Positions 1 to 39,064 are shown, numbered from the stretch's first letter. The stretch: DNA of 64,000 nt from Macrostomum hystrix (GCA_950097015.1 CATNEN010000001.1:62001-126000), one strand, 5' to 3'. A program made the numbers and translations. The notes: generated by a model from the letters alone, not told the origin.

Positions 1-3000
1 GCCGCATTCAATACAGCCAATCCTGCAGTGTTTCTCTGGCTCATTTCCACCGTCGAGGACAAGAATCTGTTTTTCGGTCACGATGATGACGGCTACAGTG
101 CTGTTAGCCTCGCATTTGAGAAGCAGAATTTGGACACACTCAAACAAGTGACTGAGAAGCTTGGTCTGGCGGAGTGCCTGGCGGCAAAAACTGCCAAAAA
201 TCAAAATATTTGCCTTCTAGCCGCATTCAATACAGCCAATCCTGCAGTGTTTCTCTGGCTCATTTCCATCGTCGAGGACAAGAATCTGTTTTTCGGTCAC
301 GATGATGACGGCTACAGTGCTGTTAGCACTGCATTTTTTAAGCAGAATTTGGACACACTCAAACGAGTGACTGAGAAGCTTGGTCTGGCGGAGTGCCTGG
401 CGGCAAAAACTGCCAAAAATGAAAATATTTGCAAAAGAGCCGCATTCAATACAGCCAATCCTGCAGTGTTTCTCTGGCTCATTTCTATCGTCGTGGACAA
501 GAATCAGTTTTTCGTTCAAGACGATGACGGCGAAAGTGCTGTTAGCATCGCATTTAATCTTCAGAATTTGGACACACTCAAACGAGTGACTGAGAAGCTT
601 GGTCTGGCGGAGTGCCTGGCGGCAAAAACTGCCAAAAATCAAAATATTTGCCTTCGAGCCGCATTCAATTCAGCCAATCCTGCAGTGTTTCTCTGGCTCA
701 TTTCCACCGTCGAGGACAAGAATCTGTTTTTCGGTCACGATGATGACGGCGAAAGTGCTGTTAGCCTCGCATTTGAGAAGCAGAATTTGGACACACTCAA
801 ACAAGTGACTGAGAAGCTTGGTCTGGCGGAGTGCCTGGCGGCAAAAACTGCCAAAAATGAAAATATTTGCCTTCGAGCCGCATTCAATACAGCCAATCCT
901 GCAGTGTTTCTCTGGCTCATTTCCACCGTCGAGGACAAGAATCTGTTTTTCGGTCACGATGATGACGGCTACAGTGCTGTTAGCCTCGCATTTGAGAAGC
1001 AGAATTTGGACACACTCAAACAAGTGACTGAGAAGCTTGGTCTGGCGGAGTGCCTGGCGGCAAAAACTGCCAAAAATCAAAATATTTGCCTTCTAGCCGC
1101 ATTCAATACAGCCAATCCTGCAGTGTTTCTCTGGCTCATTTCCATCGTCGAGGACAAGAATCTGTTTTTCGGTCACGATGATGACGGCTACAGTGCTGTT
1201 AGCACTGCATTTTTTAAGCAGAATTTGGACACACTCAAACGAGTGACTGAGAAGCTTGGTCTGGCGGAGTGCCTGGCGGCAAAAACTGCCAAAAATGAAA
1301 ATATTTGCAAAAGAGCCGCATTCAATACAGCCAATCCTGCAGTGTTTCTCTGGCTCATTTCTATCGTCGTGGACAAGAATCAGTTTTTCGTTCAAGACGA
1401 TGACGGCGAAAGTGCTGTTAGCATCGCATTTAATCTTCAGAATTTGGACACACTCAAACGAGTGACTGAGAAGCTTGGTCTGGCGGAGTGCCTGGCGGCA
1501 AAAACTGCCAAAAATCAAAATATTTGCCTTCGAGCCGCATTCAATTCAGCCAATCCTGCAGTGTTTCTCTGGCTCATTTCCACCGTCGAGGACAAGAATC
1601 TGTTTTTCGGTCACGATGATGACGGCGAAAGTGCTGTTAGCCTCGCATTTGAGAAGCAGAATTTGGACACACTCAAACAAGTGACTGAGAAGCTTGGTCT
1701 GGCGGAGTGCCTGGCGGCAAAAACTGCCAAAAATGAAAATATTTGCCTTCTAGCCGCATTCAATACAGCCAATCCTGCAGTGTTTCTCTGGCTCATTTCC
1801 ATCGTCGAGGACAAGAATCTGTTTTTCGGTCACGATGATGACGGCTACAGTGCTGTTAGCACTGCATTTTTTAAGCAGAATTTGGACACACTCAAACGAG
1901 TGACTGAGAAGCTTGGTCTGGCGGAGTGCCTGGCGGCAAAAACTGCCAAAAATCAAAATATTTGCCTTCGAGCCGCATTCAATTCAGCCAATCCTGCAGT
2001 GTTTCTCTGGCTCATTTCCATCGTCGAGGACAAGAATCTGTTTTTCGGTCACGATGATGACGGCTACAGTGCTGTTAGCATCGCATTTATGGAGCAGAAC
2101 TTGGACACACTCAAACAAGTGACTGAGAAGCTTGGTCTGGCGGAGTGCCTGGCGGCAAAAACTGCCAAAAATCAAAATATTTGCCTTCGAGCCGCATTCA
2201 ATACAGCCAATCCTGCAGTGTTTCTCTGGCTCATTTCCACCGTCGAGGACAAGAATCTGTTTTTCGGTCACGATGATGACGGCTACAGTGCTGTTAGCCT
2301 CGCATTTGAGAAGCAGAATTTGGACACACTCAAACAAGTGACTGAGAAGCTTGGTCTGGCGGAGTGCCTGGCGGCAAAAACTGCCAAAAATCAAAATATT
2401 TGCCTTCTAGCCGCATTCAATACAGCCAATCCTGCAGTGTTTCTCTGGCTCATTTCCATCGTCGAGGACAAGAATCTGTTTTTCGGTCACGATGATGACG
2501 GCTACAGTGCTGTTAGCACTGCATTTTTTAAGCAGAATTTGGACACACTCAAACGAGTGACTGAGAAGCTTGGTCTGGCGGAGTGCCTGGCGGCAAAAAC
2601 TGCCAAAAATCAAAATATTTGCCTTCGAGCCGCATTCAATTCAGCCAATCCTGCAGTGTTTCTCTGGCTCATTTCCATCGTCGAGGACAAGAATCTGTTT
2701 TTCGGTCACGATGATGACGGCTACAGTGCTGTTAGCCTCGCATTTGAGAAGCAGAATTTGGACACACTCAAACAAGTGACTGAGAAGCTTGGTCTGGCGG
2801 AGTGCCTGGCGGCAAAAACTGCCAAAAATCAAAATATTTGCCTTCTAGCCGCATTCAATACAGCCAATCCTGCAGTGTTTCTCTGGCTCATTTCCACCGT
2901 CGAGGACAAGAATCTGTTTTTCGGTCACGATGATGACGGCTACAGTGCTGTTAGCCTCGCATTTGAGAAGCAGAATTTGGACACACTCAAACAAGTGACT

Positions 3001-5946
3001 GAGAAGCTTGGTCTGGCGGAGTGCCTGGCGGCAAAAACTGCCAAAAATGAAAATATTTGCCTTCTAGCCGCATTCAATACAGCCAATCCTGCAGTGTTTC
3101 TCTGGCTCATTTCCATCGTCGAGGACAAGAAACTCTTCTTTGAAAAGGATGATGATGGAGCTGCTGCTGTATCCTTTGCCTTTTATCGCCAAGGGTTGGT
3201 CACAGTGAAGCTTTTGACAGACCGTTTTGGACTCAGCGAGTGTTTGAGTTGCATTGACAATCTAAATCGGGATTTGTTTTCTTTTTCCTCACTTAACAGC
3301 GTGAACCCGGGAGTATTTAGCTGGCTTCTAGAGCAGGTCTCCCAGCAATGTCCAGACAAGAAGTCCAGAATCTTCGAGTTGGATTCCAACGGCAACACTC
3401 TGCTTCATGCACTGTATAGGAAGGTCGATTTGTTCGGCGATGTTGATGCGCTTGCAGTGCTGATCGGCCGCATCGACTTTCTTTTTGAAAATGAAGTTGA
3501 TCCAAGAAAAGAAAACAAATTCAGACTCAACTGTCTGCTTGCCGCTGAATCCAGTGCTGACAATCTCAATCGCCTTTTGCGAGCTCTTCAAAGATCAGCG
3601 CATTTGGAAATCTTCAGAAATCTGCAAAGAAACTCGGAGGGCCTTCATGCAGCTCATGTCTTCTGCACTCGCTACGATCTCCGAGTTATCGAGAACGATT
3701 TGAGCAAGCTGTGCGGTCTCAGTCCTGACGAGCTCCTTGCAGTCCGAGTTTCTGACGGACCGCTGAAGGACGCGACTTGTCTGCACTTTGCCTGCGAATC
3801 CGGTCACAAGTTGAACATCGAATACCTTCTAAAGAAAGGACGGAAGCTGGAAGATGAGACAGACGCCGGGCAGACGAGTGTCGACTTTGCCTGCAACAAG
3901 GCGAAGCTCGAGGATGTTTTGGATGTTGCAGAGAAGTCAGTTGGTCTCGGAAAACTGCTCAAGCTGGTTGATCCAACGAAGCGAGCTCTGAACCTTCCAG
4001 ACGTTCAGAGCGCCCGAGGTCACCTGACTCGATTCAACGACTCATCGCTGAAGGCCAGCATTGAGGATGATAAATCCAGACGACAGACGAGAGGCAAGGA
4101 AGCCGGTGAGATGAAAAACGAGAGTCTGCAGGCCGGACACGGAGCTGACAGCATTTCAAAGTCCGAGGATTCGCCAGAAGTGAAAATGCTGTTCAGAGCA
4201 TTCGAGCTCGACTCAAGTGAGATGCTCCGCAGCTTGATCAGTTTGGGCTTCGCCATCGATGAGATCGATGACCAGTTCTCCAGGCATGTCTCAAAGCAGA
4301 TTGGCAATGGGCGGGAAAGCAGTAAGTCTCCTACAATAGCCAAGCTTCAAAAGTACTTCTCCTCAGAAGGAAGAGATTCTGAAGCTCTCATGCTGATGGA
4401 GTACGCAGTGCTGCTCGAGAAGCCGAAGCTGCTCAATGACCTGATGCTGCTGCCACAGTTTGACATCATCCCACAGACTTTGAGGCTGCTCGTTTATCTC
4501 AAGCCCAGAGTGAAGTCGAGCAATGTTGAGAATCTGAAAAAAGTGCAAGCTCTAGCCTTGAACATTGTCGTCAATGTTCTGGAGCACCTCTACGTGAATG
4601 CTGATGAAGAAGAGCGGAATCTTGTTTTCGCCTACCTGAGTGGCTCATTTATGGTGTCAGACGGGCATCCTCAGGTTCGAGGTCCGAGGTTCCCGCCACC
4701 ATTGGATTATCTTACCAGAAAAATTTCAAACGATAAAACTGATCACGAAAAAGTGAGCAAAGATGCGAAGAAACCAAAAAAGCCATCAGAAAAGAAGTCT
4801 GCAGCTGCAGTGATGTCAGTGATGGAGCTGGTGCAGACCCTGGACTGTGACGATTTGTTTGCCACTGACTGCATCAGCCAGTTGGTGGATCGGCAGTGGA
4901 ACGAGGCTCCACCGCTGCCCTGGAGCAGTCCTGCACGCTGCTGCTCATGCAACATACCGCAAAAGGTGACAATTCAACAGCGGTTCATCATCCACTCTGT
5001 CTTTTTCCTGGTCTTTCTGCTCTACTTTGCCTGGTACGTGACGGATTTCAGTCGGACAAAGCAGTTTCCGATTCTAGACGTCGTCCTGTTGGCCTACGCG
5101 CTGTCCTTCACTCTGCAGGAAGTCAACGACTTGCTGAACAAGCTGTCTATGAAGGACATACGAATTTTCAGAAGCCACTTGAGATGTCCTCGCTACTTCA
5201 CCGACTTCTTCAACTACTTTGACATGCTCGGCCTGCTGCTGATGTGGGCGGGGCTGGTCCTGAAGCTGCTTGGCCGGCTGAGCGACCCCAGCCTCATGCG
5301 CAGCTCTCAGGTCGTCCTCAGCGTCTCGTTCCTGTTCCTGGGATTCCGCTCCGTGGCCCTGCTCAGCTACTTCAAGGTCACTGGGCCGAACATCAATATG
5401 CTGAAGAGCTTGCTGTTCAAAGACCTGCTGCCATTCTTGATCATCATGCTGGTTCTGATCTTCTCATTTGGCATTTTCTTCTTCAACCTGCTGTTCCCGG
5501 CCTTCTCAGACCTGACAGACGTCCTGGCTCTCGTGAAGATTTTCACAACGCCCGTGTCGCTGGCCTTAAGCATCTTTGAGTTCTCGTTTTTCGAGTCGTG
5601 CAACTCCAGCAGTTTCGCGACCGGACAGACCTGTGCGGACAGTGGAGGCAACCAGGTGTACAGCCTATTCCTGATGTTCGTGTACGTCTTGCTGGTGAAC
5701 ATTGTGATGTTCAACCTGCTGATCGCACTGTTCAACCGCACCGTGACAGCGATGGCCAGCAGGGCGGAGGTTCTGTGGCGCAAGAATCTGTTCGAGCTGC
5801 TGGAGGAGTTCGCAGAGGTCAGTCCGGTTCCGCCGCCGCTGTCGTTCCCGCTCTACGCCTGGAAACTGCTGCGGAGGTGCCGCCCTTCGCACTGCCGACC
5901 CTGCGCTGGCAAAGTCGGTCCTTCTGACGGCTCTGAGAGAAGCAAG
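1..5946 (+). CDS. Ankyrin-array TRP-superfamily (TRPM-like) cation channel, paralog A, giant coding exon (5'-partial; continues left of window)
   Basis: Frame is open from base 1. It contains 14 near-identical 73-aa double-ankyrin units, then degenerate ankyrins (NGNTLLHAL, DATCLHFACESGH, GQTSVDFAC), a pre-S1 motif CISQLVDRQW, six hydrophobic segments, YFTDFFNYFD, S6 VNIVMFNLLIALFNRT, and a TRP-domain-like LWRKNLFELLEEF..SPVPPP. The exon ends at a phase-0 donor AAG|GTAAGA (5946/5947). Confidence 0.9.
19..3303 (+). repeat. Coding tandem repeat, 219-bp unit (two ankyrin repeats): 14 near-identical units plus one diverged capping unit (3085-3303)
   Basis: The AATCCTGCAGTG (NPAV) marker recurs every 219 bp from 19 to 3085. 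The unit fits the ankyrin consensus twice (DDDGYSAVSLAFEKQNLDTLK and TAKNQNICLLAAFNTANPAVFLWL). Confidence 0.95.
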
Positions 5947-14202: not shown

Positions 14203-14783
14203 GGCCTAATTTAGTCTCCAAAGTTGGCATCTGAGCTAATTTTTCAATATTTCTTCGCGAATACATTAAAAGTCCATCTTCAAGACCTCACAGAAAGTCT
14301 AATCTTAGTATTTTAGAAAATTATTCTTCAAGCAATGGCCCTCTCACCCAAATACACCCAAAGCAATTCGCACAGAACAATGGACAGCAACAATGAACCC
14401 ACAGCCGAAACTGTTTTGCAGCAATAAAATATTCAATGGCGAGTTTGAGCAGGCTAACTCATGCTTTGTCTTCGTCTCAAACTCAACTCGAGTCTTCTCT
14501 GTGCAGATTGAAGCAGCCCCTCAACCTGTGTGTTCAAAGTGAGCAGTGTTTAATCTCTCATGTGGCATTGAAACTGTTGCCAATGGAAGCTGAGAATGGG
14601 TTGGACAAAGTACTTTTGTCACCGACTCAAACCCATCTCAGATGCTTTAGTAGGCCATGCAGACCTGTCTCCGTATGGACTCAGTGTTCATGTACTTTAA
14701 TCAGCTCATAGGATGTTTGAGTAGCACAAACTGGAGCACACAGTCGCAATGCAGTGTAGAATGTATGCTCAACCCATGCTTCT

Positions 14784-20442: not shown

Positions 20443-23125
20443 GGGATTAGAGTGAGCAACTGAGAGGATGAGAGTGAGGAACTGAGAGGGATGAGAGTGA
20501 GGAACTGAGAGGGATGAGAGTGAGGAACTGAGAGGGATGAGAGTGAGGAACTGAGAGGGATGAGAGTGAGGAACTGAGAGGGATGAGAGTGAGGAACTGA
20601 GAGGGATGAGAGTGAGGAACTGAGAGGGATGAGAGTGAGGAACTGAGAGGGGATGAGAGTGAGCAACTGAGAGGGATGAGAGTGAGGAACTGAGAGGGAT
20701 GAGAGTGAGCAACTGAGAGGATGAGAGTGAGGAACTGAGAGGGATGAGAGTGAGCAACTGAGAGGGATGAGAGTGAGGAACTGAGAGGGATGAGAGTGAG
20801 GAACTGAGAGGGATGAGAGTGAGGAACTGAGAGGGGATGAGAGTGAGCAACTGAGAGGGATGAGAGTGAGGAACTGAGAGGGATGAGAGTGAGCAACTGA
20901 GAGGGATGAGAGTGAGCAACTGAGAGGGATGAGAGTGAGCAACTGAGAGGGATGAGAGGGAGGAACTGAGAGGGATGAGAGGGAGGAACTGAGAGGGATG
21001 AGAGTGAGCAACTGAGAGGGATGAGAGGGAGGAACAGAGAGGGATGAGAGTGAGGTACACAGAGGGGATGAGAGTGAGGTACACAGAGGGGATGAGAGTG
21101 AGGTACACAGAGGGGATGAGAGTGAGGTACACAGAGGGGATGAGAGTGAGGTACACAGAGGGGATGAGAGTGAGCAACTGAGAGGGATGAGAGTGAGGAA
21201 CTGAGAGGGATGAGAGTGAGCAACTGAGAGGGATGAGAGTGAGGAACTGAGAGGGATGAGAGTGAGGTACACAGAGGGGATGAGAGTGAGGTACACAGAG
21301 GGGATGAGAGTGAGCAACTGAGAGGGATGAGAGTGAGGAACTGAGAGGGATGAGAGTGAGCAACTGAGAGGGATGAGAGGGAGGAACAGAGAGGGATGAG
21401 AGTGAAGTACACAGAGGGGATGAGAGTGAGGTACACAGAGGGGATGAGAGTGAGGTACACAGAGGGGATGAGAGTTAGGAACTGAGAGGGATGAGAGTGA
21501 GGTACACAGAGGGGATGAGAGTGAGGAACTGAGAGGGATTAGAGTGAGCAACTGAGAGGATGAGAGTGAGGAACTGAGAGGGATGAGAGTGAGCAACTGA
21601 GAGGATGAGAGTGAGGAACTGAGAGGGATGAGAGTGAGGAACTGAGAGGGATTAGAGTGAGGAACTGAGAAGGATGAGAGTGAGGAACTGAGAGGGATTA
21701 GAGTGAGGAACTGAGAAGGATGAGAGTGAGGAACTGAGAAGGATGAGAGTGAGGAACTGAGAAGGATGAGAGTGAGGAACTGAGAGGGATGAGAGTGAGG
21801 AACTGAGAGGGATGAGAGTGAGGAACTGAGAGGGATTAGAGTGAGGAACTGAGAGGGATTAGAGTGGGGAACTGAGAAGGATGAGAGTGAGGAACTGAGA
21901 GGGATGAGAGTGAGGAACTGAGAGGGATTAGAGTGAGGAACTGAGAGGGATGAGAGTGAGGAACTGAGAAGGATGAGAGTGAGGAACTGAGAGGGATGAG
22001 AGTGAGGAACTGAGAGGGATGAGAGTGAGGAACTGAGAGGGATGAGAGTGAGGAACTGAGAGGGATGAGAGTGAGGAACTGAGAGGGATGAGAGTGAGGA
22101 ACTGAGAGGGATGAGAGTGAGGAACTGAGAGGGATTAGAGTGAGGAACTGAGAGGGATTAGAGTGGGGAACTGAGAAGGATGAGAGTGAGGAACTGAGAG
22201 GGATGAGAGTGAGGAACTGAGAGGGATGAGAGTGAGGAACTGAGAGGGATTAGAGTGGGGAACTGAGAAGGATGAGAGTGAGGAACTGAGAGGGATGAGA
22301 GTGAGGAACTGAGAGGGATTAGAGTGAGGAACTGAGAGGGATGAGAGTGAGGAACTGAGAGGGATGAGAGTGAGGAACTGAGAGGGATTAGAGTGAGGAA
22401 CTGAGAGGGATGAGAGTGAGGAACTGAGAGGGATGAGAGTGAGGAACTGAGAGGGATGAGAGTGAGGAACTGAGAGGGATTAGAGTGAGGAACTGAGAGG
22501 GATGAGAGTGAGGAACTGAGAGGGATTAGAGTGAGGAACTGAGAGGGATGAGAGTGAGGTACACAGAGGGGATGAGAGTGAGGTACACAGAGGGGATGAG
22601 AGTGAGGTACACAGAGGGGATGAGAGTGAGGTACACAGAGGGGATGAGAGTGAGGAACTGAGAGGGATGAGAGTGAGGAACTGAGAGGGATTAGAGTGGG
22701 GAACTGAGAAGGATGAGAGTGAGGAACTGAGAGGGATGAGAGTGAGGAACTGAGAGGGATTAGAGTGAGGAACTGAGAGGGATGAGAGTGAGGAACTGAG
22801 AAGGATGAGAGTGAGGAACTGAGAGGGATGAGAGTGAGGAACTGAGAGGGATGAGAGTGAGGAACTGAGAGGGATGAGAGTGAGGAACTGAGAGGGATGA
22901 GAGTGAGGAACTGAGAGGGATTAGAGTGAGGAACTGAGAGGGATGAGAGTGAGGAACTGAGAGGGATGAGAGTGAGGAACTGAGAGGGATTAGAGTGAGG
23001 AACTGAGAGGGATTAGAGTGAGGAACTGAGAGGGATTAGAGTGAGGAACTGAGAGGGATGAGAGTGAGGAACTGAGAGGGATTAGAGTGAGGAACTGAGA
23101 GGGATGAGAGTGAGGAATCGAGAGG
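20443..23125. repeat. Purine-rich minisatellite, 23-bp GGGATGAGAGTGAGGAACTGAGA / 24-bp GGGGATGAGAGTGAGGTACACAGA
   Basis: About 115 copies, ending about 0.7 kb upstream of the paralog B ATG. Confidence 0.96.
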
Positions 23126-23761
23126 ACATTGGAGTGAGGAATAGAGAGGGTGATGTGAGGTGGAGATGTGGGACTTGAGGAACGGGGTTAAAACTTTAGC
23201 AAATTTTCAAGATTAGATATTTGATTTCTTACATTAGCTATTTCATTATTCTACTATAATATATTTTATATATTATTAGCTGTTGCTATGGTAAAATTAT
23301 TTAACGAAAAATACATTACTTGTGCCACCCAGCAATACGTTGTCAGGCAATAATTGTACCTGACAATTATTTACTAAAAAACTGCACCAATTTTGGATCT
23401 CAATTTTATATTCTAATTTACCATTAAACTCAATAAAAGGTTGATGAGCACAGGCTGGATAGAGGAATAAGGATCCAGAATAGGGAGATAGGGAGAATGC
23501 AGAATGGGAAGACAGGAACGGAAGGAGGATGTCTGGGAGATTCAATAGCGGGATTAAGAAGGTGATAAGCGGTACACGCATGAATGTGTTCAAATTTTTA
23601 ATGTCTTGTAATTTCAAAACATTTTCATTAATTGCCTTTTTTAATTAACAGCAAGTGCAGCAGCATTTCAAGTACACGAATAAGAAATTTATTGTTTCTA
23701 ACGTGCCTCACTTGTCACTATTGACCTGACACGGCCAAAATAAGTCTGTGTCTTCAGTTTT

Positions 23762-23838: not shown

Positions 23839-26800
23839 ATGGACACCAATGCTAGCGTCCGTGGACCGGAAGATGCCGGATCAGAGGACCAGGAACTCGA
23901 GGATGCAGAATCGCCGGTCTCTACGTGGGAAGACAGTGGATCAATGAGTCAGAGAAGTGAGTCGGACTCAACTTTCTCTCTGCTGAGCGATGAAAACTTC
24001 GTAATGAACCAAGAGCCGGAGTTGCGAGTTTTCTTCTGGAACATCAAGTATGGAGGTGTTGAAAATAGTCTGCGCAATGACCTTCTTCGAGCCATAGACA
24101 GCAGCGACTCTGAGGAGCTGAGCAGAATATCAGACAGAATCAGAAAAGGACTTCAAGACGATGATGATGCAGAAGTAAAAGCGCTGCTGCTTCTGTCAGC
24201 CGCCGAGCCAGAGCTGGAACTGCAGCAGTTCTTGACTGAAAGACACGCCGACTCATGCCTGCAGGTGCGAAATTCATCAGCGAACAACATGCTGCACTTT
24301 GTGTGCGGATGCGACAACTCAGATTCAGCAACTGCAGCCTTGGAGCTGATCTATAACAAAGTGGGCAAACAGCTGGTCAAGGATGTCAACAACTCAAAGC
24401 AGCTGCCTGTACACATCGCAGCTGAAAACAGCAAGAATCCTGCAGTGTTTCTCTGGCTCATTTCCACCGTCGAGGACAAGAAACTGTTTTTCGTTCAAGA
24501 CGATGACGGCGAAAGTGCTGTTAGCATAGCGTTTCTATATCAGAACTTGGAAACTCTCAAACAAGTGACTGAGAAGCTTGGTCTGGCGGAGTGCCTGGCG
24601 GCAAAACCTGCCAAAAATCAAAATATTTGCCTTCGAGCCGCATTCAATACAGCCAATCCTGCAGTGTTTCTCTGGCTCATTTCCACCGTCGAGGACAAGA
24701 AACTGTTTTTCGTTCAAGACAATGACGGATACAGTGCTGTTAGCACCGCCTTTGATCAGCTGAACTTGGACACACTCAAACAAGTGACTGAGAAGCTTGG
24801 TCTGGCGGAGTGCCTGGCGGCAAAAACTGCCAAAAATGAAAATATTTGCCTTCGAGCCGCATTCAATACAGACAATCCTGCAGTGTTTCTCTGGCTCATT
24901 TCCACCGTCGAGGACAAGAAACTGTTTTTCGTTCAAGACGATGACGGCTACAGTGCTGTTAGTTCAGCATTTTTTAAACAGAACTTGGACACACTCAAAC
25001 AAGTGACTGAGAAGCTTGGTCTGGCGGAGTGCCTGGCGGCAAAAACTGCCAAAAATGAAAATATTTGCTTTCGAGCCGCATTCAATACAGCCAATCCTGC
25101 AGTGTTTCTCTGGCTCATTTCCACCATCGAGGACAAGAATCTGTTTTTCGTTCAAGACGATGACGGCTACAGTGCTGTTAGCATAGCATTTGAGAAGCAG
25201 AATTTGGACACTCTTAAACAAGTGACTGAGAAGCTTGGTCTGGCGGAGTGCCTGGCGGCAAAAACTGCCAAAAATCAAAATATTTGCTTTCGAGCCGCAT
25301 TCAATAGAGCCAATCCTGCAGTGTTTCTCTGGCTCATTTCCACCGTCGAGGACAAGAATCTGCTTTTCATTCAAGACGATTATGGCCAAACTGCTGTTAG
25401 CATAGCATTTGATCAGCTGAACTTGGACACACTCAAACAAGTGACTGAGAAGCTTGGTCTGGCGGAGTGCCTGGCGGCAAAAACTGCCAAAAGTCAAAAT
25501 ATTTGCCTTGTAGCCGCATTCAATACAGCCAATCCTGCAGTGTTTCTCTGGCTCATTTCCATCGTCGAGGACAAGAATCAGTTTTTCGTTCAAGACGACG
25601 ACGGCTACAGTGCTGTTAGCACAGCGTTTCTATATCAGAACTTGGACACACTCAAACAAGTGACTGAGAAGCTTGGTCTGGCGGAGTGCCTGGCAGCAAA
25701 AACTGCCAAAAGTCAAAATATTTGCCTTCTAGCCGCATTCAATACAGCCAATCCTGCAGTGTTTCTCTGGCTCATTTCCACCGTCGAGGACAAGAATCAG
25801 TTTTTCGTTCAAGACGACGACGGCTACAGTGCTGTTAGCACAGCGTTTCTATATCAGAACTTGGACACACTCAAACAAGTGACTGAGAAGCTTGGTCTGG
25901 CGGAGTGCCTGGCAGCAAAAACTGCCAAAAATCAAAATATTTGCCTTCTAGCCGCATTCAATACAGCCAATCCTGCAGTGTTTCTCTGGCTCATTTCCAT
26001 CGTCGAGGACAAGAATCTGTTTTTCGGTCACGATGATGACGGCTACAGTGCTGTTAGCACTGCATTTTTTAAGCAGAATTTGGACACACTCAAACAAGTG
26101 ACTGAGAAGCTTGGTCTGGCGGAGTGCCTGGCGGCAAAAACTGCCAAAAATCAAAATATTTGCAAAAGAGCCGCATTCAATACAGCCAATCCTGCAGTGT
26201 TTCTCTGGCTCATTTCCACCGTCGAGGACAAGAATCTGTTTTTCGTTCAAGACGATGACGGCGAAAGTGCTGTTAGCATAGCATTTTTTAAACAGAACTT
26301 GGACACGCTCAAACAAGTGACTGAGAAGCTTGGTCTGGCGGAGTGCCTGGCGGCAAAAACTGCCAAAAATCAAAATATTTGCTTCTTTGCCGCAATCAAT
26401 ACAGCCAATCCTGCAGTGTTTCTCTGGCTCATTTCCACCGTCGAGGACAAGAAACTGTTTTTCGTTCATGACGATTATGGCCAAACTGCTGTTAGCCACG
26501 CATTTGAGAAGCAGAATTTGGACACTCTCAAACAAGTGACTGAGAAGCTTGGTCTGGCGGAGTGCCTGGCGGCAAAAACTGCCAAAAATGAAAATATTTG
26601 CCTTCGAGCCGCATTAAATACAGCCAATCCTGCAGTGTTTCTCTGGCTCATTTCCACCGTCGAGGACAAGAAACTGTTTTTCGTTCATGACGATTATGGC
26701 CAAACTGCTGTTAGCCTCGCATTTGAGAAGCAGAATTTGGACACACTCAAACAAGTGACTGAGAAGCTTGGTCTGTCGAAGTGCCTGGCGGCAAAAACTG

Positions 26801-29800
26801 CCAAAAATGAAAATATTTGCCTTCGAGCCGCATTCAATACAGCCAATCCTGCAGTGTTTCTCTGGCTCATTTTTACCGTCGAGGACAAGAATCTGTTTTT
26901 CGTTCAAGACGATGACGGCTACAGTGCTGTTAGCACCGCCTTTGATCAGCTGAACTTGGACACACTCAAACAAGTGACTGCGAAGCTTGGTCTGGCAGAG
27001 TGCCTGGCGGCAAAAACTGCCAAAAATGAAAATATTTGTAAAAGAGCCGCATTCAATACAGCCAATCCTGCAGTGTTTCTCTGGCTCATTTTTACCGTCG
27101 AGGACAAGAATCAGTTTTTCGTTCAAGACGATGACGGCTACAGTGCTGTTAGCATAGCATTTTTTAATCAGAACTTGGACACACTCAAACAAGTGACTGA
27201 GAAGCTTGGTCTGGCGGAGTGCCTGGCGGCAAAAACTGCCAAAAATCAAAATATTTGCGTTCGAGCCGCATTCAATTCAGCCAATCCTGCAGTGTTTCTC
27301 TGGCTCATTTCCACCGTCGAGGACAAGAATCTGTTTTTCGTTCAAGACGATGACGGCGAAAGTGCTGTTAGCATCGCATTTAATCTTCAGAACTTGGACA
27401 CACTCAAACAAGTGACTGAGAAGCTTGGTCTGGCGGAGTGCCTGGCGGCAAAAACTGCCAAAAATGAAAATATTTGCCTTCGAGCCGCATTCAATACAGC
27501 CAATCCTGCAGTGTTTCTCTGGCTCATTTCCACCGTCGAGGACAACAATCTGTTTTTCGTTCAAGACAATGACGGCTACAGTGCTGTAACCACAGCATTT
27601 TTTTGTCTGAATTTGGACACACTCAAACAAGTGACTGAGAAGCTTGGTCTGGCGGAGTGCCTGGCGGCAAAAACTGCCAAAAATCAAAATATTTGCCTTC
27701 GAGCCGCAGCGAATTCAGCCAACCCTGCAGTGTTTCTCTGGCTCATTTCCATCGTCAAGGACAAGAATCAGTTTTTCGCAAAGGATAGTGACGGAGCGGC
27801 TTCTGTATCCTTTGCCTTTCATCGACAAGGCTTGGTCACAGTGAAGCTTTTGACAGACCGTTTTGGACTCAGCGAGTGTTTGAGCTGCATTGACAATCTA
27901 AATCGGGATTTGTTTTTTTATTCCAATCTGAACAGCGCGAACCCGGCAGTATTTCCCTGGCTTCTCGAGCAGGTCTCCCAGCAATGTCCAGACAAGAAGT
28001 CCAGAATTTGCGAGTTGGATTCCAACGGCAACACTCTCCTTCATGCACTGTTTAGGAAGGTTGATTTGTTCGGCGATGTTGATGCGCTTGCAGTGCTGAT
28101 CGGCCGCATAAACCTTCTTTTTGAAAATGAAGTTGATCCAAGAAAAGAAAACAAATTCAGACTCAACTGTCTGCTTGCCGCTGAATCCAGTGCTGACAAT
28201 CTCAATCGTCTTTTGCGAGCTCTTCAAAGATCAGCGCATTTGGATATCTTCAGAAATCTGCAAAGAAACTCGGAGGGCCTTCATGCAGCTCATGTCTTCT
28301 GCACTCGCTACGAGCTCCGAGTTATCGAGAACAATTTGAGCAAGCTGTGCGGTCTCAGTCCTGACGAGATCCTTGCAGTCCGAGTTTCTGACGGACCGCT
28401 GAAGGATGCAACTTGTCTGCACTTTGCCTGCGAATCCGGTCACAAGTTGAACATCGAATACCTTCTAAAGAAAGGAAGGAAGCTGGAAGATGAGACAGAC
28501 GCCGGGCAGACGAGTGTCGACTTTGCCTGCAACAAGGCGAAGCTCGAGGATGTTTTGGATGTTGCAGAGAAGTCAGTTGGTCTCGGAAAACTGCTCAAGC
28601 TGGTTGATCCAACGAACCGAGCTCTGAACCTTCCGGACGTTCAGAGCGCCCGAGGTCACCTGACTCGATTCAACGACTCATCGCTGAAGGCCAGCATTGA
28701 GGATGATAAATCCAGACGACAGACGAGAGGCAAGGAAGCCGGTGAGATGAAAAATGAGAGTCATGTCGGATACGGAGCTGACAGCATTTCAAAGTCCGAG
28801 GATTCGCCAGAAGTGAAAATGCTGTTCAGAGCATTCGAGCTCGACTCAAGTGAGATGCTCCGCAGCTTGATCAGTTTGGGCTTCGCCATCGATGAGATCG
28901 ATGACCAGTTCTCCAGGCATGTCTCAAAGCAGATTGGCAATGGGCGGGAAAGCAGTAAGTCTCCTACAATAGCCAAGCTTCAAAAGTACTTCTCCTCAGA
29001 AGAAAGAGATTCTGAAGCTCTCATGCTGATGGAGTACGCAGTGCTGCTCGAGAAGCCGAAGCTGCTCAATGACCTGATGCTGCTGCCACAGTTTGACATC
29101 ATCCCACAGACTTTGAGGCTGCTCGTTTATCTCAAGCCCAGAGTGAAGTCGAGCAATGTTGAGAATCTGAAAAAAGTGCAAGCTCTAGCCTTGAACATTG
29201 TCGTCAATGTTCTGGAGCACCTCTACGTGAATGCTGATGAAGAAGAGCGGAATCTTGTTTTCGCCTACCTGAGTGGCTCATTTATGGTGTCAGACGGGCA
29301 TTCTCAGGTTCGAGGTCCGAGGTTCCCGCCACCATTGGATTATCTTACCAGAAAAATTTCAAACGATAAAACTGATCTCGAAAAAGTGAGCAAAGATGCG
29401 AAGAAACCAAAAAAGCCATCAGAAAAGAAGTCTGCAGCTGCAGTGATGTCAGTGATGGAGCTGGTGCAGACCCTGGACTGTGACGATGTGTTTGCCACTG
29501 ACTGCATCAGCCAGTTGGTGGATCGGCAGTGGAACGAGGCTCCACCGCTGCCCTGGAGCAGTCCTGCACGCTGCTGCTCATGCAACATACCGCAAAAGGT
29601 GACAATTAAACAGCGGTTCTTCCTCCACTCTGCCTTTTTCCTGGTCTTTCTGCTCTACTTTGCCTGGTACGTGACGGATTTCAGTCGGACAAAGCAGTTT
29701 CCGATTCTAGACGTCGTCCTGTTGGCCTACGCGCTGTCCTTCACTCTGCAGGAAGTCAACGACTTGCTGAACAAGCTGTCTATGAAGGACATACGAATTT

Positions 29801-30579
29801 TCAGAAGCCACTTGAGATGTCCTCGCTACTTCACCGACTTCTTTAACTACTTTGACATGCTCGGCCTGCTGCTGATGTGGGCGGGGCTGGTCCTGAAGCT
29901 GCTTGGCCGGCTGAGCGACCCCAGCCTCATGCGCAGCTCTCAGGTCGTCCTCAGCGTCTCGTTCCTGTTCCTGGGATTCCGCTCCGTGGCCCTGCTCAGC
30001 TACTTCAAGGTCACTGGGCCGAACATCAATATGCTGAAGAGCTTGCTGTTCAAAGACCTGCTGCCATTCTTGATCATCATGCTGGTTCTGATCTTCTCAT
30101 TTGGCATTTTCTTCTTCAACCTGCTGTTCCCGGCCTTCTCAGACCTGACAGACGTCCTGGCTCTCGTGAAGATTTTCACAACGCCCGTGTCGCTGGCCTT
30201 AAGCATCTTTGAGTTTTCGCTGTTCGAGTCGTGCAACTCCAGCAGTCTCGCGACCGGACAGACCTGTGCGGACAGTGGAGGCAACCAGGTGTACAGCCTA
30301 TTCCTGATGTTCGTGTACGTCTTGCTGGTGAACATTGTGATGTTCAACCTGCTGATCGCACTGTTCAACCGCACCGTGACAGCGATGGCCAGCAGGGCGG
30401 AGGTTCTGTGGCGCAAGAATCTGTTCGAGCTGCTGGAGGAGTTCGCAGAGGTCAGTCCGGTTCCGCCGCCGCTGTCGTTCCCGCTCTACGCCTGGAAACT
30501 GCTGCGGAGGTGCCGCCCTTCGCACTGCCGACCCTGCGCTGGCAAAGTCGGTCCTTCTGACGGCTCTGAGAGAAGCAAG
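23839..30579 (+). CDS. Ankyrin-array TRP-superfamily (TRPM-like) cation channel, paralog B, giant coding exon (2247 codons)
   Basis: ATG preceded by an in-frame stop. Acidic N-terminus, degenerate ankyrins (NNMLHFVC, QLPVHIAA), 15 x 73-aa units plus cap, further ankyrins, and a 6-TM TRP domain nearly identical to paralog A. Donor AAG|GTAAGA at 30579/30580. Confidence 0.92.
24436..27939 (+). repeat. Coding tandem repeat, 219-bp double-ankyrin unit: 15 units plus a diverged capping unit (27721-27939)
   Basis: NPAV marker at 24436 + n*219 up to 27721 and 27940. Confidence 0.95.
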
Positions 30580-30984
30580 GTAAGAGGCCTGGTGGACTGA
30601 GGGACTGACTCTGTTACTCACAGATGATAAATGTTCTGAATATATAGGCACTAGATTCAGTCAGACAATGACCGAATCCAATTTTCAATTGCAAGAACTG
30701 ATTGTGTGTACATGAATGCAAATGGCTTTATAGCAAAGACATGCTCAGATTATAGTAAGCTGGGGCTTGTCTTGAAACTCTTGAGGACTGATTAACAGTA
30801 GAAGCAAGGTGAGAGGCCTGGTGAGCGCAGGTGAACTGAGGGGCTGACTATGTTTACTCATATAGGCACTAGATTGAGTCAGACGATGACCGAATCCAAT
30901 TTGAATGGAAATAACTGGTTGTGTGCACATGATTGCAAATAAGGTCATGTTTCAAGGCGCTCTTCCTCACGGCTTCCGTTCCAG
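30580..30984 (+). other. GT-AG intron of paralog B (405 bp)
   Basis: Same donor and acceptor as in paralog A. Confidence 0.8.
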
Positions 30985-31428
30985 CCGTGGTGGACGAACC
31001 GGAGCGACTTCAGCGGCTACCCCGAAGACTTCAAGCGCTTCCTGATCTTCCAGGCCGAGCAGCTCCGGCAGCAGCGGCCACGGCTGCAGCGGGCGGTCGA
31101 GCGGCACAAGGGGGACGTCGATGTGCTGAAGGCGCACGTGGAGAACCAGGTCAAGGACCTGCGGGAGGAACTGCGGGATAATATTCAGGATGTGCTCACC
31201 GCTCAGAGAGAGGACACTGAGAAAATCGAGACCGATGTGAAGGGCGTCAAAGAAAGTGTTGGAAAGCTGAACGAGGACGTCAACGAACTCAAAGAGCTGC
31301 AGCTCCGCCAACGAAGACGAGTAAAGCGAGTGAACGATGAGATGAAAGAAAACTTCGAGAACCTGCAGCAGCAAATGTCGCAGGTGATGAGCATTCTGGA
31401 GCAACTGCAGCAGCAGCGTCAGCAGTGA
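30985..31428 (+). CDS. Paralog B terminal coding exon (147 aa, extended coiled coil)
   Basis: ccag|CCG TGG TGG...; in frame with ORF 31123..31428; heptad-like VKDLREELRDNIQDVLTAQREDTEKIETDVKGVKESVGKLNEDVNELKEL. Confidence 0.85.
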   Translation, partial: PWWTNRSDFSGYPEDFKRFLIFQAEQLRQQRPRLQRAVERHKGDVDVLKAHVENQVKDLREELRDNIQDVLTAQREDTEKIETDVKGVKESVGKLNEDVNELKELQLRQRRRVKRVNDEMKENFENLQQQMSQVMSILEQLQQQRQQ

Positions 31429-32212
31429 CCAGGCGACTCCAGCACACGCAGTTTGTAAGCTCTGAACAGTTGTAGCCCAAATTGTAATACGAAATCGATG
31501 ACTGCCACTTTATTTCTGGTTAAAAAGAGCCAAACTCAGCATGAAAACAATTAGAGTCTTTCCGAACCATCCTTGACTACTTTCAGGCCTCTTAATCATT
31601 GCAGTTGCTTCTTCAGTTGCTGGGCCTCACAAAAACTGATATTTTGTTTGCCGACAGAAGATTTTCTAAATTTTAATTTTTTATTCGACGGAATTTCGCT
31701 ACTGCCGATAGATACATGTACAGTTACAAAAACAATTGATTGAACCGAATTGAATTTCAAATAGTAAAAGTTAGCAGAAGTTATTGAAAGATATTCGCTT
31801 TACTCACATTTTTCGCTCATTTTCCAATAAATTTGTTCGAAAATATTTCGAATCATTCAACTTGATTTCGAACTCATTTCAGAGTATGTACCTAGAATAT
31901 ATTATTTAAAAATTGCCATGTTTCTGCTCTTGTGCCATCATATTTCACTTTCTAGAATTCGGTTGTGTCTTGTGCTCACTAGCACAATGCACCATGTGCT
32001 CAAGCCCATTGCACCCTGAACTCGTGTCCGCTTTCGCTTGAGTACTTCCCTCGCTTTTATATCTTTCCTGGTGCTTTTGGAGATGACAAAGAAACCTTCC
32101 GAATGGATGAAATCTACAGCTTCTCAAGCTCTGCCAGACTGAACACTAATGAGAAGGGGATTTCTGCAGTGTGAAGCTTTTGTCGCTTTCATCGAGTAAC
32201 CAGCCAAAATTG

Positions 32213-32890
32213 CCCTGTGCAAAGCAGTCAAGAATCCCCTGTGTGAGCAGTCTAGAATCCCCTGTGTGAGCAGTCTAGAATCCTCTGTGTGAGCAGTCTA
32301 GAATCCCCTGTGTGAGCAGTCTAGAATCCTCTGTGTGAGCAGTCTAGAATGCCCTGTGTGAGCAGTCTAGAATCCCCTGTGCAAAGCAGTCTAGAATGCC
32401 CTGTGTGAGCAGTCTAGAATCCCCTGTGTGAGCAGTCTAGAATCCCCTGTGTGAGCAGTCTAGAATCCCCTGTGTGAGCAGTCTAGAATCCGCTGTGTGA
32501 GCAGTCTAGAATCCCCTGTGTGAGCAGTCTAGAATCCTCTGTGTGAGCAGTCTAGAATCCCCTGTGTGAGCAGTCTAGAATCCCCTGTGTGAGCAGTCTA
32601 GAATCCCCTGTGTGAGCAGTCTAGAATCCCCTGTGTGAGCAGTCTAGAATTCCCTGTGCAAAGCAGTCTAGAATCCCCTATGCAAAGCAGTCTAGAATCC
32701 CCTGTGCAAAGCAGTCTAGAATCCCCTGTGCAAAGCATTCTAGAATCCCACTGTGCAAAGCAGTCTAGAATCCCCTGTGTGAGCAGTCTAGAATCCCCTG
32801 TGCAAAGCAGTCTAGAATCCCCTGTGCAAAGCAGTCTAGAATCCCCTGTGTGAGCAGTCTAGAATCCCCTGTGCAAAGCAGTCTAGAATC
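32213..32890. repeat. Minisatellite 23/24-bp (counterpart of 7335-7917)
   Basis: GTGAGCAGTCTAGAATCCCCTGT dominates the left part and the 24-bp variant the right part. Confidence 0.95.
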
Positions 32891-37544: not shown

Positions 37545-37849
37545 CTGCAGACGCCAATTTAAGAGCCGGAGTGGAGCATCGTTTCGCTCTTCATTTGCGA
37601 CGGCAGCTTTCAAGCAGCCGACTGACCGACATCCACCGACCGAGTCTCTCCGTTGCTAGGCGAGACTCTCCGGATCTCCCGTTGCTGCTGTAGTGCAGGT
37701 GAGGGGGTTAATTGCTGAACTAGTTTCCATAAACTACTAAACAGTGCTTTACTCTCTTAATGCTGTTATTTCTAACCAACAGTAGGTATATTAGTCGTTT
37801 GTTAAACTATGCTTTAGATGGATTTCAGAAATACAATCCTGACAGATAA

Positions 37850-39064
37850 AATGAGAGACAGAATGACATGAAATGCGAGACACAATGACATGAAATGAGA
37901 GACACAATGACATGAAATGAATGACAAAATGACATGAAATGAGAGACACAATGACATGAAATGAGAGACACAATGACATGAAATGAGAGACAGAATGATA
38001 TGAAATGAGAGACACAATGATATGATATGAGAGACACAATGACATGAAATGAGAGACACAATGACATGAAATGAGAGACACAATGACATGAAATGAGAGA
38101 CAGAATGATATGAAATGAGAGACACAATGACATGAAATGAGAGACACAATGACATGAAATGAGAGACACAATGACATGATATGAGAGACACAATGATATG
38201 AAATGAGAGACACAATGACATGAAATGAGAGACACAATGACATGAAATGAGAGACACAATGACATGAAATGAGAGACAGAATGATATGAAATGAGAGACA
38301 CAATGATATGAAATGAGAGACACAATGACATGAAATGAGAGACACAATGACATGAAATGAGAGACACAATGACATGAAATGAGAGACACAATGACATGAA
38401 ATGAGAGACACAATGACATGAAATGAGAGACACAATGACATGAAATGAGAGACACAATGACATGAAATGAGAGACACAATGACATGAAATGAGAGACACA
38501 ATGACATGAAATGAGAGACACAATGACATGAAATGAGAGACACAATGACATGAAATGAGAGACAGAATGATATGATATGAGAGACACAATGACATGAAAT
38601 GAGAGACACAATGACATGAAATGAGAGACACAATGACATGAAATGAGAGACACAATGACATGAAATGAGAGACACAATGACATGAAATGAGAGACACAAT
38701 GACATGAAATGAGAGACACAATGACATGAAATGAGAGACACAATGACATGAAATGAGAGACACAATGACATGAAATGAGAGACACAATGACATGAAATGA
38801 GAGACACAATGACATGAAATGAGAGACACAATGACATGAAATGAGAGACAGAATGATATGAAATGAGAGACAGAATGATATGAAATGAGAGACACAATGA
38901 CATGAAATGAGAGACACAATGACATGAAATGAGAGACACAATGACATGAAATGAGAGACACAATGACATGAAATGAGAGACACAATGACATGAAATGAGA
39001 GACACAATGACATGAAATGAGAGACACAATGACATGAAATGAGAGACACAATGACATGAAATGA
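37850..39064. repeat. 22-bp minisatellite (counterpart of 12640-14202)
   Basis: About 55 copies, with different variant units (CAGAATGATATG). Confidence 0.96.

What the first reader, a model, noticed from the sequence alone, without database searches (positions are those of the whole stretch)
24436..27939. TRP channel with a hypervariable, DARPin-like ankyrin array: candidate diversifying recognition receptor-channel
Seen: the 73-aa units are almost invariant at scaffold and silent sites, while multi-nucleotide, non-synonymous variation piles up at a few fixed codons. In paralog B, units 1-15 read as follows. After 'AF': LYQ, DQL, FKQ, EKQ, DQL, LYQ, LYQ, FKQ, FKQ, EKQ, EKQ, DQL, FNQ, NLQ, FCL. 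Before 'AF': I, T, S, I, I, T, T, T, I, H, L, T, I, I, T. After 'G': E/Y/Q. After 'NIC': LR, LR, FR, FR, LV, LL, LL, KR, FF, LR, LR, KR, VR, LR, LR. Established: aligned to the ankyrin consensus DxxGxTPLHxAAxxG, these are the beta-turn and inner-helix positions that form the concave binding face and are largely those randomised in DARPin libraries. Homogenised repeats with hypervariable surface codons are the hallmark of fungal HNWD/NLR allorecognition receptors. Inference: this is a family of ion channels whose cytoplasmic ligand specificity is programmed by a shuffled repeat code, for example a non-self or pathogen sensor that triggers cation influx, or a diversified chemosensor, rather than a NompC-style mechanical spring.
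Basis: partly seen in the sequence, partly recalled or inferred. Interest (0 to 1): 0.92.

Follow-up and report, generated by a model that had tools for sequence, protein, structure and literature searches.

The report
Flatworm TRP channel, hypervariable ankyrin array
An expressed flatworm (most likely Macrostomum hystrix) ion-channel gene carries 15 near-identical double-ankyrin modules that differ mainly at about a dozen codons on the inner-helix face; this pattern is known from fungal immune receptors but I found no report of it in an ion channel, and its function is untested.

Summary
They lie in one 6.7-kb exon (23839-30579).

- **Fold:** each 73-aa unit is predicted to form two ankyrin repeats (pLDDT 92.8). 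The C-terminal half folds and aligns as a TRPM-type channel core.
- **Transcription:** RNA contigs show the family is transcribed and spliced. The intron is 30580-30984 and a coiled-coil exon is 30985-31428.
- **Family:** the genome has 10 close tandem paralogs with 2 to about 38 homogenised units.
- **Variation:** across 136 units, non-synonymous diversity at the hypervariable codons is 0.36, against 0.075 for scaffold synonymous diversity. Synonymous diversity falls to 0.015 far from these codons.
- **Position:** the hypervariable codons sit on helix 1 and the preceding turn of both sub-repeats (ankyrin positions 5, 9, 10, 13, 14, 15). The same positions vary in Macrostomum lignano homologues.

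Caveats: tests using each site's own synonymous rate are weak. Overlap with DARPin library positions is partial. The array is cytoplasmic. No ligand, polymorphism between individuals, or immune role is shown.

The scan had already flagged sibling paralogs on other DNA of this genome.

Verdict: real, unusual, and probably a diversifying binding surface. The function is open.

The parts
23839..30579 (+). Paralog B, giant coding exon 1 (2247 codons). The ORF reads on to a stop at 30600 only because it runs into the intron.
   Evidence: ORF. Splice donor AAG|gtaaga at 30579/30580 read. The joint is present in RNA contigs of runs X1 and X3 and absent from DNA run X8.
23839..24435 (+). N-terminal acidic region plus capping ankyrin repeats (includes the canonical 'PVHIAAENS' motif).
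   Evidence: Translation. Weak Ank_2 hit. Helical repeat in the AF2 model.
24436..27720 (+). 15 homogenised 219-bp (73-aa) double-ankyrin units. Unit k starts at 24436+219(k-1). Hypervariable codons in each unit are 26, 31, 34, 35, 36, 62, 66, 67, 70, 72, and also 11, 17, 20, 21, 24.
   Evidence: Ankyrin fold.
27721..27939 (+). Degenerate unit 16 (49% identical to the unit consensus).
27940..29637 (+). Non-homogenised ankyrin repeats (the only ones Pfam calls, about aa 1520-1570) and a helical linker domain (pre-S1, TRPM MHR4-like).
   Evidence: Pfam Ank hits. AF2 model and TRPM3/4 fold matches.
29638..30450 (+). Transmembrane channel domain S1-S6 with TRP helix ('VLWRKNLFELLEEF...PVPPPLSF').
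   Evidence: Pfam Ion_trans at 32.8 bits, above the cut-off of 25. phmmer to TRPM3/TRPM2 at E 2e-15. Long S6-TRP helix in the model. Foldseek matches to TRPM4/TRPM3.
30580..30984 (+). GT..AG intron.
   Evidence: Skipped in contigs of X1 and X3. Continuous in DNA run X8. Sequence.
30985..31428 (+). Exon 2: 147 codons plus TGA. Conserved post-TRP segment and coiled coil. This is the true C-terminus.
   Evidence: Frame continues from exon 1. The translation parallels the M. lignano C-termini 'PWW..DFSGYP..FKRFL'. It gives only coiled-coil-type Pfam noise. The two exons were never joined; each was searched by reference on its own.
1..5946 (+). Paralog A. The window holds its last 15 units (1-3303) and the channel part. 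The full gene has 29 units and starts upstream of the window.
   Evidence: L032.

Best explanation
The gene encodes a subunit of a TRPM-type cation channel. The usual N-terminal TRPM homology region is replaced by a long cytoplasmic ankyrin solenoid of about 39 repeats in this copy.

**How the array evolves.** Thirty of the repeats form 15 near-identical 73-aa double-ankyrin modules. The array evolves by unequal crossing-over and gene conversion (concerted evolution). This keeps the scaffold uniform and changes module number (2 to about 38 homogenised units) and order among at least 10 tandem paralogs.

**Where variation is kept.** About a dozen codons keep or gain amino-acid diversity well above the neutral level. 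They sit on the non-packing face of the first helix of each repeat and on the turn before it. The most likely reading is that this face is a protein-binding surface under diversity-enhancing selection. Each paralog would then present a different combinatorial surface to cytoplasmic partners that gate, tether or localise the channel.

**Shown:** the anatomy, the predicted fold, the paralog family, transcription, and the diversity contrast.

**Inferred:** the surface binds something, selection rather than mutation causes the diversity, and binding affects gating.
For: - **Anatomy:** the units and the variable codons are verified.
- **Diversity contrast:** hypervariable-codon piN is 0.363 against scaffold piS 0.075 (bootstrap CI 0.042-0.117). 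In paralog B alone the values are 0.409 against 0.080.
- **Parsimony counts:** the non-synonymous rate at codons 11, 17, 26, 31, 34, 35, 62, 66, 67, 70 and 72 is 3-7x the background synonymous rate, significant after Bonferroni correction.
- **Tree-free bound:** 3.8x, p 8e-10.
- **Synonymous gradient:** 0.015 per site at 6 or more codons from a hypervariable codon, against 0.09-0.15 nearby. Non-repeat parts of the paralogs have pS 0.035. So the scaffold is actively homogenised, and variation near these codons is older or faster.
- **Fold:** AF2 pLDDT 92.8. Best fold matches are Espin ankyrin domain (TM 0.70/0.80), NOMPC, TRPA1, ankyrin-B/R and DARPins.
- **Placement:** the variable codons follow the same h-2, h+2, h+3, h+6, h+7 pattern on helix 1 of both sub-repeats. 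The conserved residues between them are small and hydrophobic. Of the 12 most variable codons, only the weak two-state codon 11 (T/I) lies on the second helix of a sub-repeat, at its C-terminal end.
- **Cross-species:** the same positions vary in M. lignano P0002 and P0004 (Spearman 0.51, p 5e-6).
- **Combinatorics:** 53 and 37 distinct face motifs, partly re-assorted.
- **Gene integrity:** no stops in 136 units. Scaffold and tail omega are 0.45-0.53.
- **Transcription:** spliced RNA contigs from two studies.
Against: - With each site's own synonymous count (SLAC-like test), only codons 11, 17, 20, 62 and 72 reach p<0.05. Codons 31, 34, 35, 66 and 67 also carry many synonymous changes. Local hypermutation, or conversion from divergent donors, is therefore not excluded.
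- Tree-based counts are inflated by recombination.
The 'concave face' placement rests on secondary structure, helical periodicity and textbook ankyrin geometry.
- Most variable codons have one dominant residue.
- No ligand is known, and there are no data between individuals.
- RNA contigs are a collapsed consensus of the paralogs, so expression of copy B itself is not shown.
- The assembly was long-read with short-read polishing (PMC10468722), which can introduce errors in arrays.
Confidence: 0.55

Rival explanations
1. The array is a mechanical element, acting as a NOMPC-like spring, tether or spacer. Module number is what matters. The variable codons are simply the least constrained surface positions, and they retain old module types that unequal crossing-over shuffles. 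There is no selection for diversity.
For: NOMPC is among the best fold matches for both the array and the channel half. Array length varies about 20-fold among paralogs. Within hypervariable codons, piN (0.36) is about equal to piS (0.32), so omega is near 1 by the sites' own standard. Several motifs recur as linked 'types', for example the set seen in ...VHDDYGQTAVSLAFEKQ....
Against: Neutral surface codons should not exceed the synonymous diversity of the same units, yet they do so 4-10x in every array tested. Variation follows helical periodicity on one face of helix 1 in both sub-repeats and, apart from the weak two-state codon 11, spares the second helices. The channel core is TRPM-like, not TRPN.
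Confidence: 0.25
2. The pattern is mutational rather than selective. Short gene-conversion tracts from divergent older paralogs, or a local mutation hotspot, keep re-introducing clustered differences at fixed places in the unit.
For: Synonymous diversity is also raised in and near the variable codons. Multi-nucleotide differences and linked blocks spanning codons 20-36 exist. Older paralogs with divergent 73-aa units are present in the genome (L040, L041, L043).
Against: A mutational process should not follow an i, i+3, i+4 helical pattern, nor the same structural positions in both sub-repeats, while sparing the intervening buried codons 28, 29, 32, 33, 64, 65, 68 and 69. No stop codons appear at about 1600 hypervariable codon instances. 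The window has no other gene, such as a reverse transcriptase.
Confidence: 0.12
3. This is a young, decaying gene family, with runaway repeat expansion in genes that are losing function. The pattern has no functional meaning.
For: Omega is fairly high in the non-repeat parts (0.53). One paralog (C1:137k) has two frameshifts. Three copies have different N-termini. The family sits in minisatellite-rich DNA.
Against: Nine of ten copies keep uninterrupted exons of 3.7-9.6 kb. Omega is below 1. The family is transcribed and correctly spliced in two studies. The architecture and the variable positions are shared with M. lignano at about 63% identity.
Confidence: 0.08

Closest known systems
Fungal NLR/STAND receptors with internally conserved ANK, TPR or WD repeats (HET-E/D, NWD family; Paoletti 2007, Dyrka 2014, PMC4986451)
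   Same: Repeats are at least 85% identical to each other. Repeat number varies. Repeats are shuffled within and between paralogs. [quoted passage not shown]
   Different: Here the output domain is a TRP channel rather than a NOD plus cell-death domain. The host is an animal. The unit is a 73-aa pair of ankyrin repeats. Polymorphism between individuals and formal positive selection are not yet shown.
NOMPC/TRPN (PDB 5vkq)
   Same: A TRP channel with a very long N-terminal cytoplasmic ankyrin solenoid. It is a structural match for both halves.
   Different: To my knowledge, NOMPC's 29 repeats differ from one another and are conserved between species. The core here is closer to TRPM in sequence and fold. 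Here array length and surface vary between paralogs.
TRPM channels (TRPM3, TRPM4, TRPM2)
   Same: These are the best sequence and fold matches for the linker, S1-S6 and TRP helix. The 'PPP' motif after the TRP helix and a C-terminal coiled coil are also shared.
   Different: No TRPM N-terminal homology (SLOG/MHR1-3) domain was detected. Ankyrin repeats stand in its place.
DARPin libraries (Binz et al. 2003; positions recalled from my own knowledge)
   Same: An identical consensus scaffold with variable residues on the beta-turn and helix 1. Positions 5, 13 and 14 (and weakly 3 and 33) coincide. DARPins appear among the fold matches.
   Different: Positions 9, 10 and 15, which are framework in DARPins, vary here. 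Only about 3 strongly variable and 9 moderately variable codons occur per two repeats. The repeats carry extra short helices.
PRDM9 zinc-finger minisatellite (an animal example of the same evolutionary mode; from my own knowledge)
   Same: A coding minisatellite with homogenised units and hypervariable contact residues. It evolves by unequal exchange.
   Different: It has a different fold and a different ligand (DNA), it is a single gene, and there is no channel.

Membership tests
Ankyrin repeat | Sequence match to the Pfam ankyrin models within the units | tested here: not met
   Three units scanned alone give no Ank hit, only spurious DUF hits. Ank hits lie only after the array.
Ankyrin repeat | Helix-turn-helix plus beta-turn solenoid fold | tested here: met
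   AF2 pLDDT 92.8. Foldseek finds Espin1 ankyrin domain at E 1e-10 (TM 0.70/0.80), plus NOMPC, TRPA1 and ankyrin-B. This is a predicted model, not an experimental structure.
Ankyrin repeat | Homology to units with the canonical TxLHxAA motif | tested here: met
   M. lignano P0001 and own-genome L040/L041 units align position for position and carry 'RTILHAAAEN' and 'SAVHVAF'.
TRP channel | Six-helix ion-transport domain with pore loop | tested here: met
   PF00520 at 32.8 bits, above the cut-off of 25. Helices in the model.
TRP channel | TRP helix after S6 and similarity to solved TRP channels | tested here: met
   'EVLWRKNLFELLEEF' follows S6. phmmer to TRPM3/2/4 at E 1e-15 to 1e-12. Foldseek to TRPM4/TRPM3 at E 1e-11.
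TRP channel | Cation conduction | not testable with these tools
   Needs electrophysiology.
TRPM subfamily | N-terminal TRPM homology region (SLOG/MHR1-3) | tested here: not met
   No such Pfam family at E up to 0.1 on the whole protein. The N-terminus is ankyrin.
TRPM subfamily | Phylogenetic placement of the channel core inside TRPM | not tested
   Only best-hit evidence is available. TRPC-like clusters score nearly as well in the Atlas.
Repeat arrays with high internal conservation under diversifying selection (Paoletti/Dyrka criteria) | At least 85% identity between repeats over at least 100 aa | tested here: met
   136 units are each at least 80% identical (aa) to the unit consensus (the filter used). 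TRF reports 92-94% nucleotide matches.
Repeat arrays with high internal conservation under diversifying selection (Paoletti/Dyrka criteria) | Repeat-number variation | tested here: inconclusive
   2 to about 38 homogenised units between paralogs. Variation between individuals was not tested.
Repeat arrays with high internal conservation under diversifying selection (Paoletti/Dyrka criteria) | Positive selection at specific codons | tested here: inconclusive
   Strong against the background dS. Weak with site-specific dS. No recombination-aware likelihood test could be run.
Repeat arrays with high internal conservation under diversifying selection (Paoletti/Dyrka criteria) | Selected sites map to the interaction surface | tested here: inconclusive
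   The sites lie on helix 1 and the preceding turn with helical periodicity. Solvent exposure was not computed.

The most novel reading that the evidence does not exclude
A germline-encoded, combinatorially diversified receptor-channel family in an animal. The ankyrin arrays would evolve like fungal NLR repeats or PRDM9 fingers to recognise fast-changing cytoplasmic ligands. Candidates are effectors of intracellular parasites or symbionts, toxins, or partner-derived proteins after hypodermic insemination. Binding would be converted directly into cation influx through a TRPM-type pore. This would amount to an 'NLR-like sensor wired to an ion channel'.
Probability: 0.15. Interest if true: 0.92.

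Novelty: new variant of a known kind. Interest (0 to 1): 0.72.

Why it matters
Ankyrin arrays of TRP channels are usually seen as springs, tethers or regulatory platforms that are conserved between species.

A channel family whose array is homogenised like a minisatellite, but diversified on one helical face, would be the first ion channel known to me to evolve in the way known for fungal NLRs and PRDM9. It suggests that ligand recognition by a repeat 'code' can be coupled directly to ion flux.

It also gives a natural, DARPin-like series of surfaces on one scaffold. Macrostomum has transgenic and RNAi tools, so binding specificity and gating could be tested by swapping arrays.

If the pattern proves to be only relaxed constraint plus repeat turnover, it is still a clean case of concerted evolution inside a giant coding exon.

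Tried and rejected
- **Spurious Pfam hits:** hits on the array (DUF6352, DUF7574, DUF1292, NMB0315_dom_I, E2-E1mid and others) are summed weak matches on a repeat and were discarded.
- **Rfam:** nothing in the window.
- **Antisense ORFs:** the 133-211 aa ORFs across the array, and the ORFs in minisatellites, are by-products of periodic sequence.
- **Site-specific selection test:** a SLAC-like test using each site's own synonymous count gave little. It is reported as a caveat, not as support.
- **Surface mapping:** I could not map variable residues on the model surface, because model coordinates are not exposed to scripts.
- **Which copy is expressed:** RNA contigs could not be assigned to copy B. 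Their variant letters match C1:137k and C5:5.96M best (23 of 25), and the DNA depth is far above that of nearby flanking sequence, so they are a collapsed family consensus.
- **Literature:** searches found nothing on Macrostomum TRP/ankyrin, on the M. lignano gene identifiers, or on TRP channels with concerted evolution.
- **Atlas:** the first Atlas call failed on length.
- **Array-only proteins:** a search with the array region found only M. lignano channel homologues.
- **P0001 control:** the divergent M. lignano array P0001 does not share the variability profile (rho 0.09). The pattern therefore belongs to the homogenised sub-clade only.
- **Spliced model:** The two exons were analysed separately by reference.


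Full report
**1. What is there**

The window is G000:C1:62001-126000 of a 220,453,370-base, 42-contig genome. The closest database proteins are all from Macrostomum lignano, at 62-65% identity. The published M. hystrix assembly is described as about 220 Mb in 42 contigs (PMC10468722). The source is therefore most likely M. hystrix; this is an inference from that match.

TRF reports a 219-bp array at 24436-27778 with 15.3 copies and 92% matches. A sister array lies at 1-3131. The array sits in frame in one ORF at 23839-30600. Slicing at the NPAVF anchor gives units exactly 73 aa apart.

**2. Gene model and transcription**

Contigs of public runs were laid on 27800-32200.
- Runs X1 and X3 come from two different studies. 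Their contigs join 30579 to 30985 and skip a GT..AG interval.
- DNA run X8 covers that interval continuously.
- The spliced form can only come from RNA, so the family is transcribed.

The true gene is exon 1 (23839-30579), an intron (30580-30984) and exon 2 (30985-31428). Exon 2 encodes 'PWW..DFSGYPEDFKRFLIFQ...' and a coiled coil. This parallels the M. lignano C-termini. I analysed the two exons separately by reference and built no joined sequence.

The laid contigs carry letters that match other paralogs best: 23 of 25 for C1:137k and C5:5.96M. Their DNA depth is 3-4x that of sequence just downstream of the gene. They are therefore a collapsed family consensus. Expression of copy B itself is not proven.

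**3. Domains**

Pfam calls ankyrin only after the array (about aa 1520-1570). It calls Ion_trans at 29638-30399 with 32.8 bits against a cut-off of 25. The units themselves give only spurious hits.

The channel half matches solved TRPM3, TRPM2 and TRPM4 at E 1e-15 to 1e-12. Atlas neighbours are TRPM first and TRPC second.

An AF2 model of aa 1368-2247 (pLDDT 72) finds TRPM4/TRPM3 as best folds, with TM 0.61 on the target. NOMPC is ranked sixth. No TRPM N-terminal homology domain is detected. The protein is thus a TRPM-type core carrying ankyrin repeats instead.

An AF2 model of aa 120-500 (the cap plus four units) has pLDDT 92.8. It matches Espin ankyrin domain (TM 0.70/0.80), NOMPC, TRPA1, ankyrin-B/R and DARPins.

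From the DSSP string, each unit is two ankyrin repeats:

| Sub-repeat | Helix 1 | Helix 2 | Extra helix |
|---|---|---|---|
| a | positions 64-70 | positions 2-11 of the next unit | 15-19 |
| b | positions 28-35 | positions 38-48 | 50-55 |

Older relatives keep the canonical motifs at the same places: 'RTILHAAAEN' and 'SAVHVAF' in M. lignano P0001, and L040 and L041 in this genome.

**4. The family**

The genome holds 10 close paralogs, 93-100% identical in the channel part. They form two tandem clusters, at C1:32-160 kb and C5:5.95-6.07 Mb. More than 60 more distant matches also exist.

Homogenised-unit counts, excluding the 1-2 degenerate terminal units of each array, are 2, 3, 8, 11, 11, 12, 15, 19, 28 and about 38.

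The longest copy (C1:137k) has two frameshifts. This could be decay, or an error of a long-read assembly polished with short reads.

Only M. lignano channel homologues share the unit in the protein database.

**5. Is variation concentrated beyond chance?**

The analysis used 136 homogenised units, of which 110 are unique at the nucleotide level and 108 at the protein level.

*Diversity contrast.*
- Scaffold codons: piS 0.075 (bootstrap CI 0.042-0.117) and piN 0.034.
- The eight most variable codons (26, 31, 34, 35, 36, 66, 67, 70): piN 0.363.
- The ratio of hypervariable piN to scaffold piS is 4.8 overall. It is 5.1 in paralog B alone and 3.9-10.3 in three other arrays.

*Tree-free bound.* A minimum spanning tree over the codon states at each site gives 54 non-synonymous steps on 19 sites. 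This compares with 33 synonymous steps on 44 scaffold sites (3.8x, binomial p 8e-10). Because the eight codons were chosen for their variability, this p is inflated; the Bonferroni-corrected per-codon test below does not have that problem.

*Parsimony on a FastTree tree.* Non-synonymous rates are 3-7x the background synonymous rate at codons 11, 17, 26, 31, 34, 35, 62, 66, 67, 70 and 72. All are significant after Bonferroni correction.

*The caveat.* Using each site's own synonymous changes, only 11, 17, 20, 62 and 72 reach p<0.05. Codons 31, 34, 35, 66 and 67 also carry much synonymous change; piS inside the hypervariable codons is 0.32.

*Synonymous gradient.* Purely synonymous heterozygosity falls with distance from a hypervariable codon:

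| Distance from nearest hypervariable codon | Synonymous heterozygosity per site |
|---|---|
| Within the codon | 0.146 |
| 1-2 codons | 0.094 |
| 3-5 codons | 0.142 |
| 6 or more codons | 0.015 |

The non-repeat parts of the paralogs differ by pS 0.035 and pN 0.019.

So the far scaffold is more uniform than the genes that carry it, which indicates active homogenisation. The neighbourhood of the variable codons is more diverse than the gene family is old. Two processes would produce this: long retention of variants by selection with hitch-hiking, or a local mutation or conversion process.

**6. Where the variable codons lie**

In both sub-repeats they occupy the residue two before helix 1, and helix-1 positions +2, +3, +6, +7 and +8.
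- Sub-repeat b: 26 | 30 (weak), 31, 34, 35, 36.
- Sub-repeat a: 62 | 66, 67, 70, 72.

The conserved residues between them are small and hydrophobic: A28, V29, A32, F33 and I64, C65, A68, A69. This is the packing face.

In canonical ankyrin numbering these are positions 5, 9, 10, 13, 14 and 15. DARPin libraries randomise 2, 3, 5, 13, 14 and 33 (my own knowledge of Binz et al. 2003; PMC8683736 confirms only that surface positions are randomised).

Five of the 12 top codons therefore coincide with DARPin positions. Weaker variation occurs at the equivalents of positions 3 and 33 (codons 24 and 21). Of the 12 top codons only the weak two-state codon 11 (T/I) lies on a helix 2, at its C-terminal end; codon 17 lies in the short extra helix. 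Solvent exposure could not be computed.

The same positions (20, 21, 24, 26, 31, 34, 35, 66) are the most variable in the M. lignano homogenised arrays P0002 and P0004 (Spearman 0.51, p 5e-6). The divergent array P0001 shows no such profile (rho 0.09).

Only 31, 34 and 35 are truly hypervariable, with 9-10 residues each. The others keep one residue in 56-85% of units.

Face motifs are numerous, at 53 and 37 distinct forms, and partly re-assorted. There are 96 joint combinations against 121 expected for free assortment. 45 of 136 units have their nearest relative in another paralog.

**7. Interpretation**

The most likely reading (about 0.55) is a TRPM-type channel whose cytoplasmic ankyrin solenoid evolves by concerted evolution, with a diversity-favoured binding face.

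The rivals are:
- a mechanical or spacer array with merely unconstrained surface codons (0.25);
- a mutational or conversion artefact (0.12);
- a decaying family (0.08).

Nothing supports the specific proposals of non-self, pathogen or chemical sensing. The array is on the cytoplasmic side, as in all TRP channels, so any ligand must be intracellular.

**8. Known parallels and novelty**

The evolutionary mode matches fungal NLR repeats. There, ANK, TPR and WD arrays with high internal conservation show repeat-number polymorphism and positive selection on the concave face (PMC4986451). In animals it matches the PRDM9 finger array (my own knowledge).

I found no paper describing it for an ion channel.

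Earlier agents of this scan examined sibling paralogs. They also judged the pattern real but selection unproven. This report adds:
- the diversity contrast;
- the synonymous gradient;
- the cross-species profile;
- the splice and expression evidence.

I class it as a new variant of known kinds.

Noticed in passing
window 1-24600 versus 24600-49000: The window is a tandem segmental duplication of about 24.6 kb. Each copy carries one channel gene followed by the same series of minisatellites with periods of about 24, 32, 56, 22, 20, 28, 20 and 23 bp. Examples are 7335-7917 versus 32223-32890, and 12633-14203 versus 37849-39065.
   Followed up: partly
window 45025-64000: A 23-bp minisatellite (AGAGGGATGAGAGTGAGGAACTG) runs for at least 19 kb (815 copies) to the window's end, with extreme GC skew of about +0.78. 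The upstream copy of the same array (20443-23150) has only 117 copies.
   Followed up: no
window 30801-30900: Inside the intron lies a partial duplicate of the exon 1 end plus splice donor ('gaagcaaggtgagaggcctggtg...'), a copy of about 30572-30660.
   Followed up: no
window 31454-31607: Run X1 shows two or three alternative short GT..AG skips downstream of the stop codon (31454 to 31587, 31605 or 31607). This suggests alternative splicing in the 3' UTR.
   Followed up: no
L042 (G000:C1:126001-129600) and L033: The next paralog downstream (C1:137k) has about 38 units but two frameshifts, one in the N-terminal region and one inside the array. It is either a pseudogene or carries long-read assembly indels.
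   Followed up: partly
protein P0010: A 1537-aa ankyrin-TRP protein, 36% identical to this channel, is filed in NCBI under a Kangiellaceae bacterium MAG on a 5-kb contig. It is probably flatworm or other animal contamination of a metagenome bin.
   Followed up: no
L031, L034, L035: Three paralogs have N-termini unrelated to the 'MDTNASVRGPED' start of the others ('MNFLFRCDLDLW...' and 'MDLSVSYIDKQ...'). This suggests 5' exon replacement during the tandem duplications.
   Followed up: no
L043, L044, L041: Distant paralogs with 29-57% identical channel parts also have a double-ankyrin period of about 72-73 aa, with canonical TPLH and CFH motifs. The two-repeat module is therefore old, and only the youngest clade is homogenised.
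   Followed up: partly
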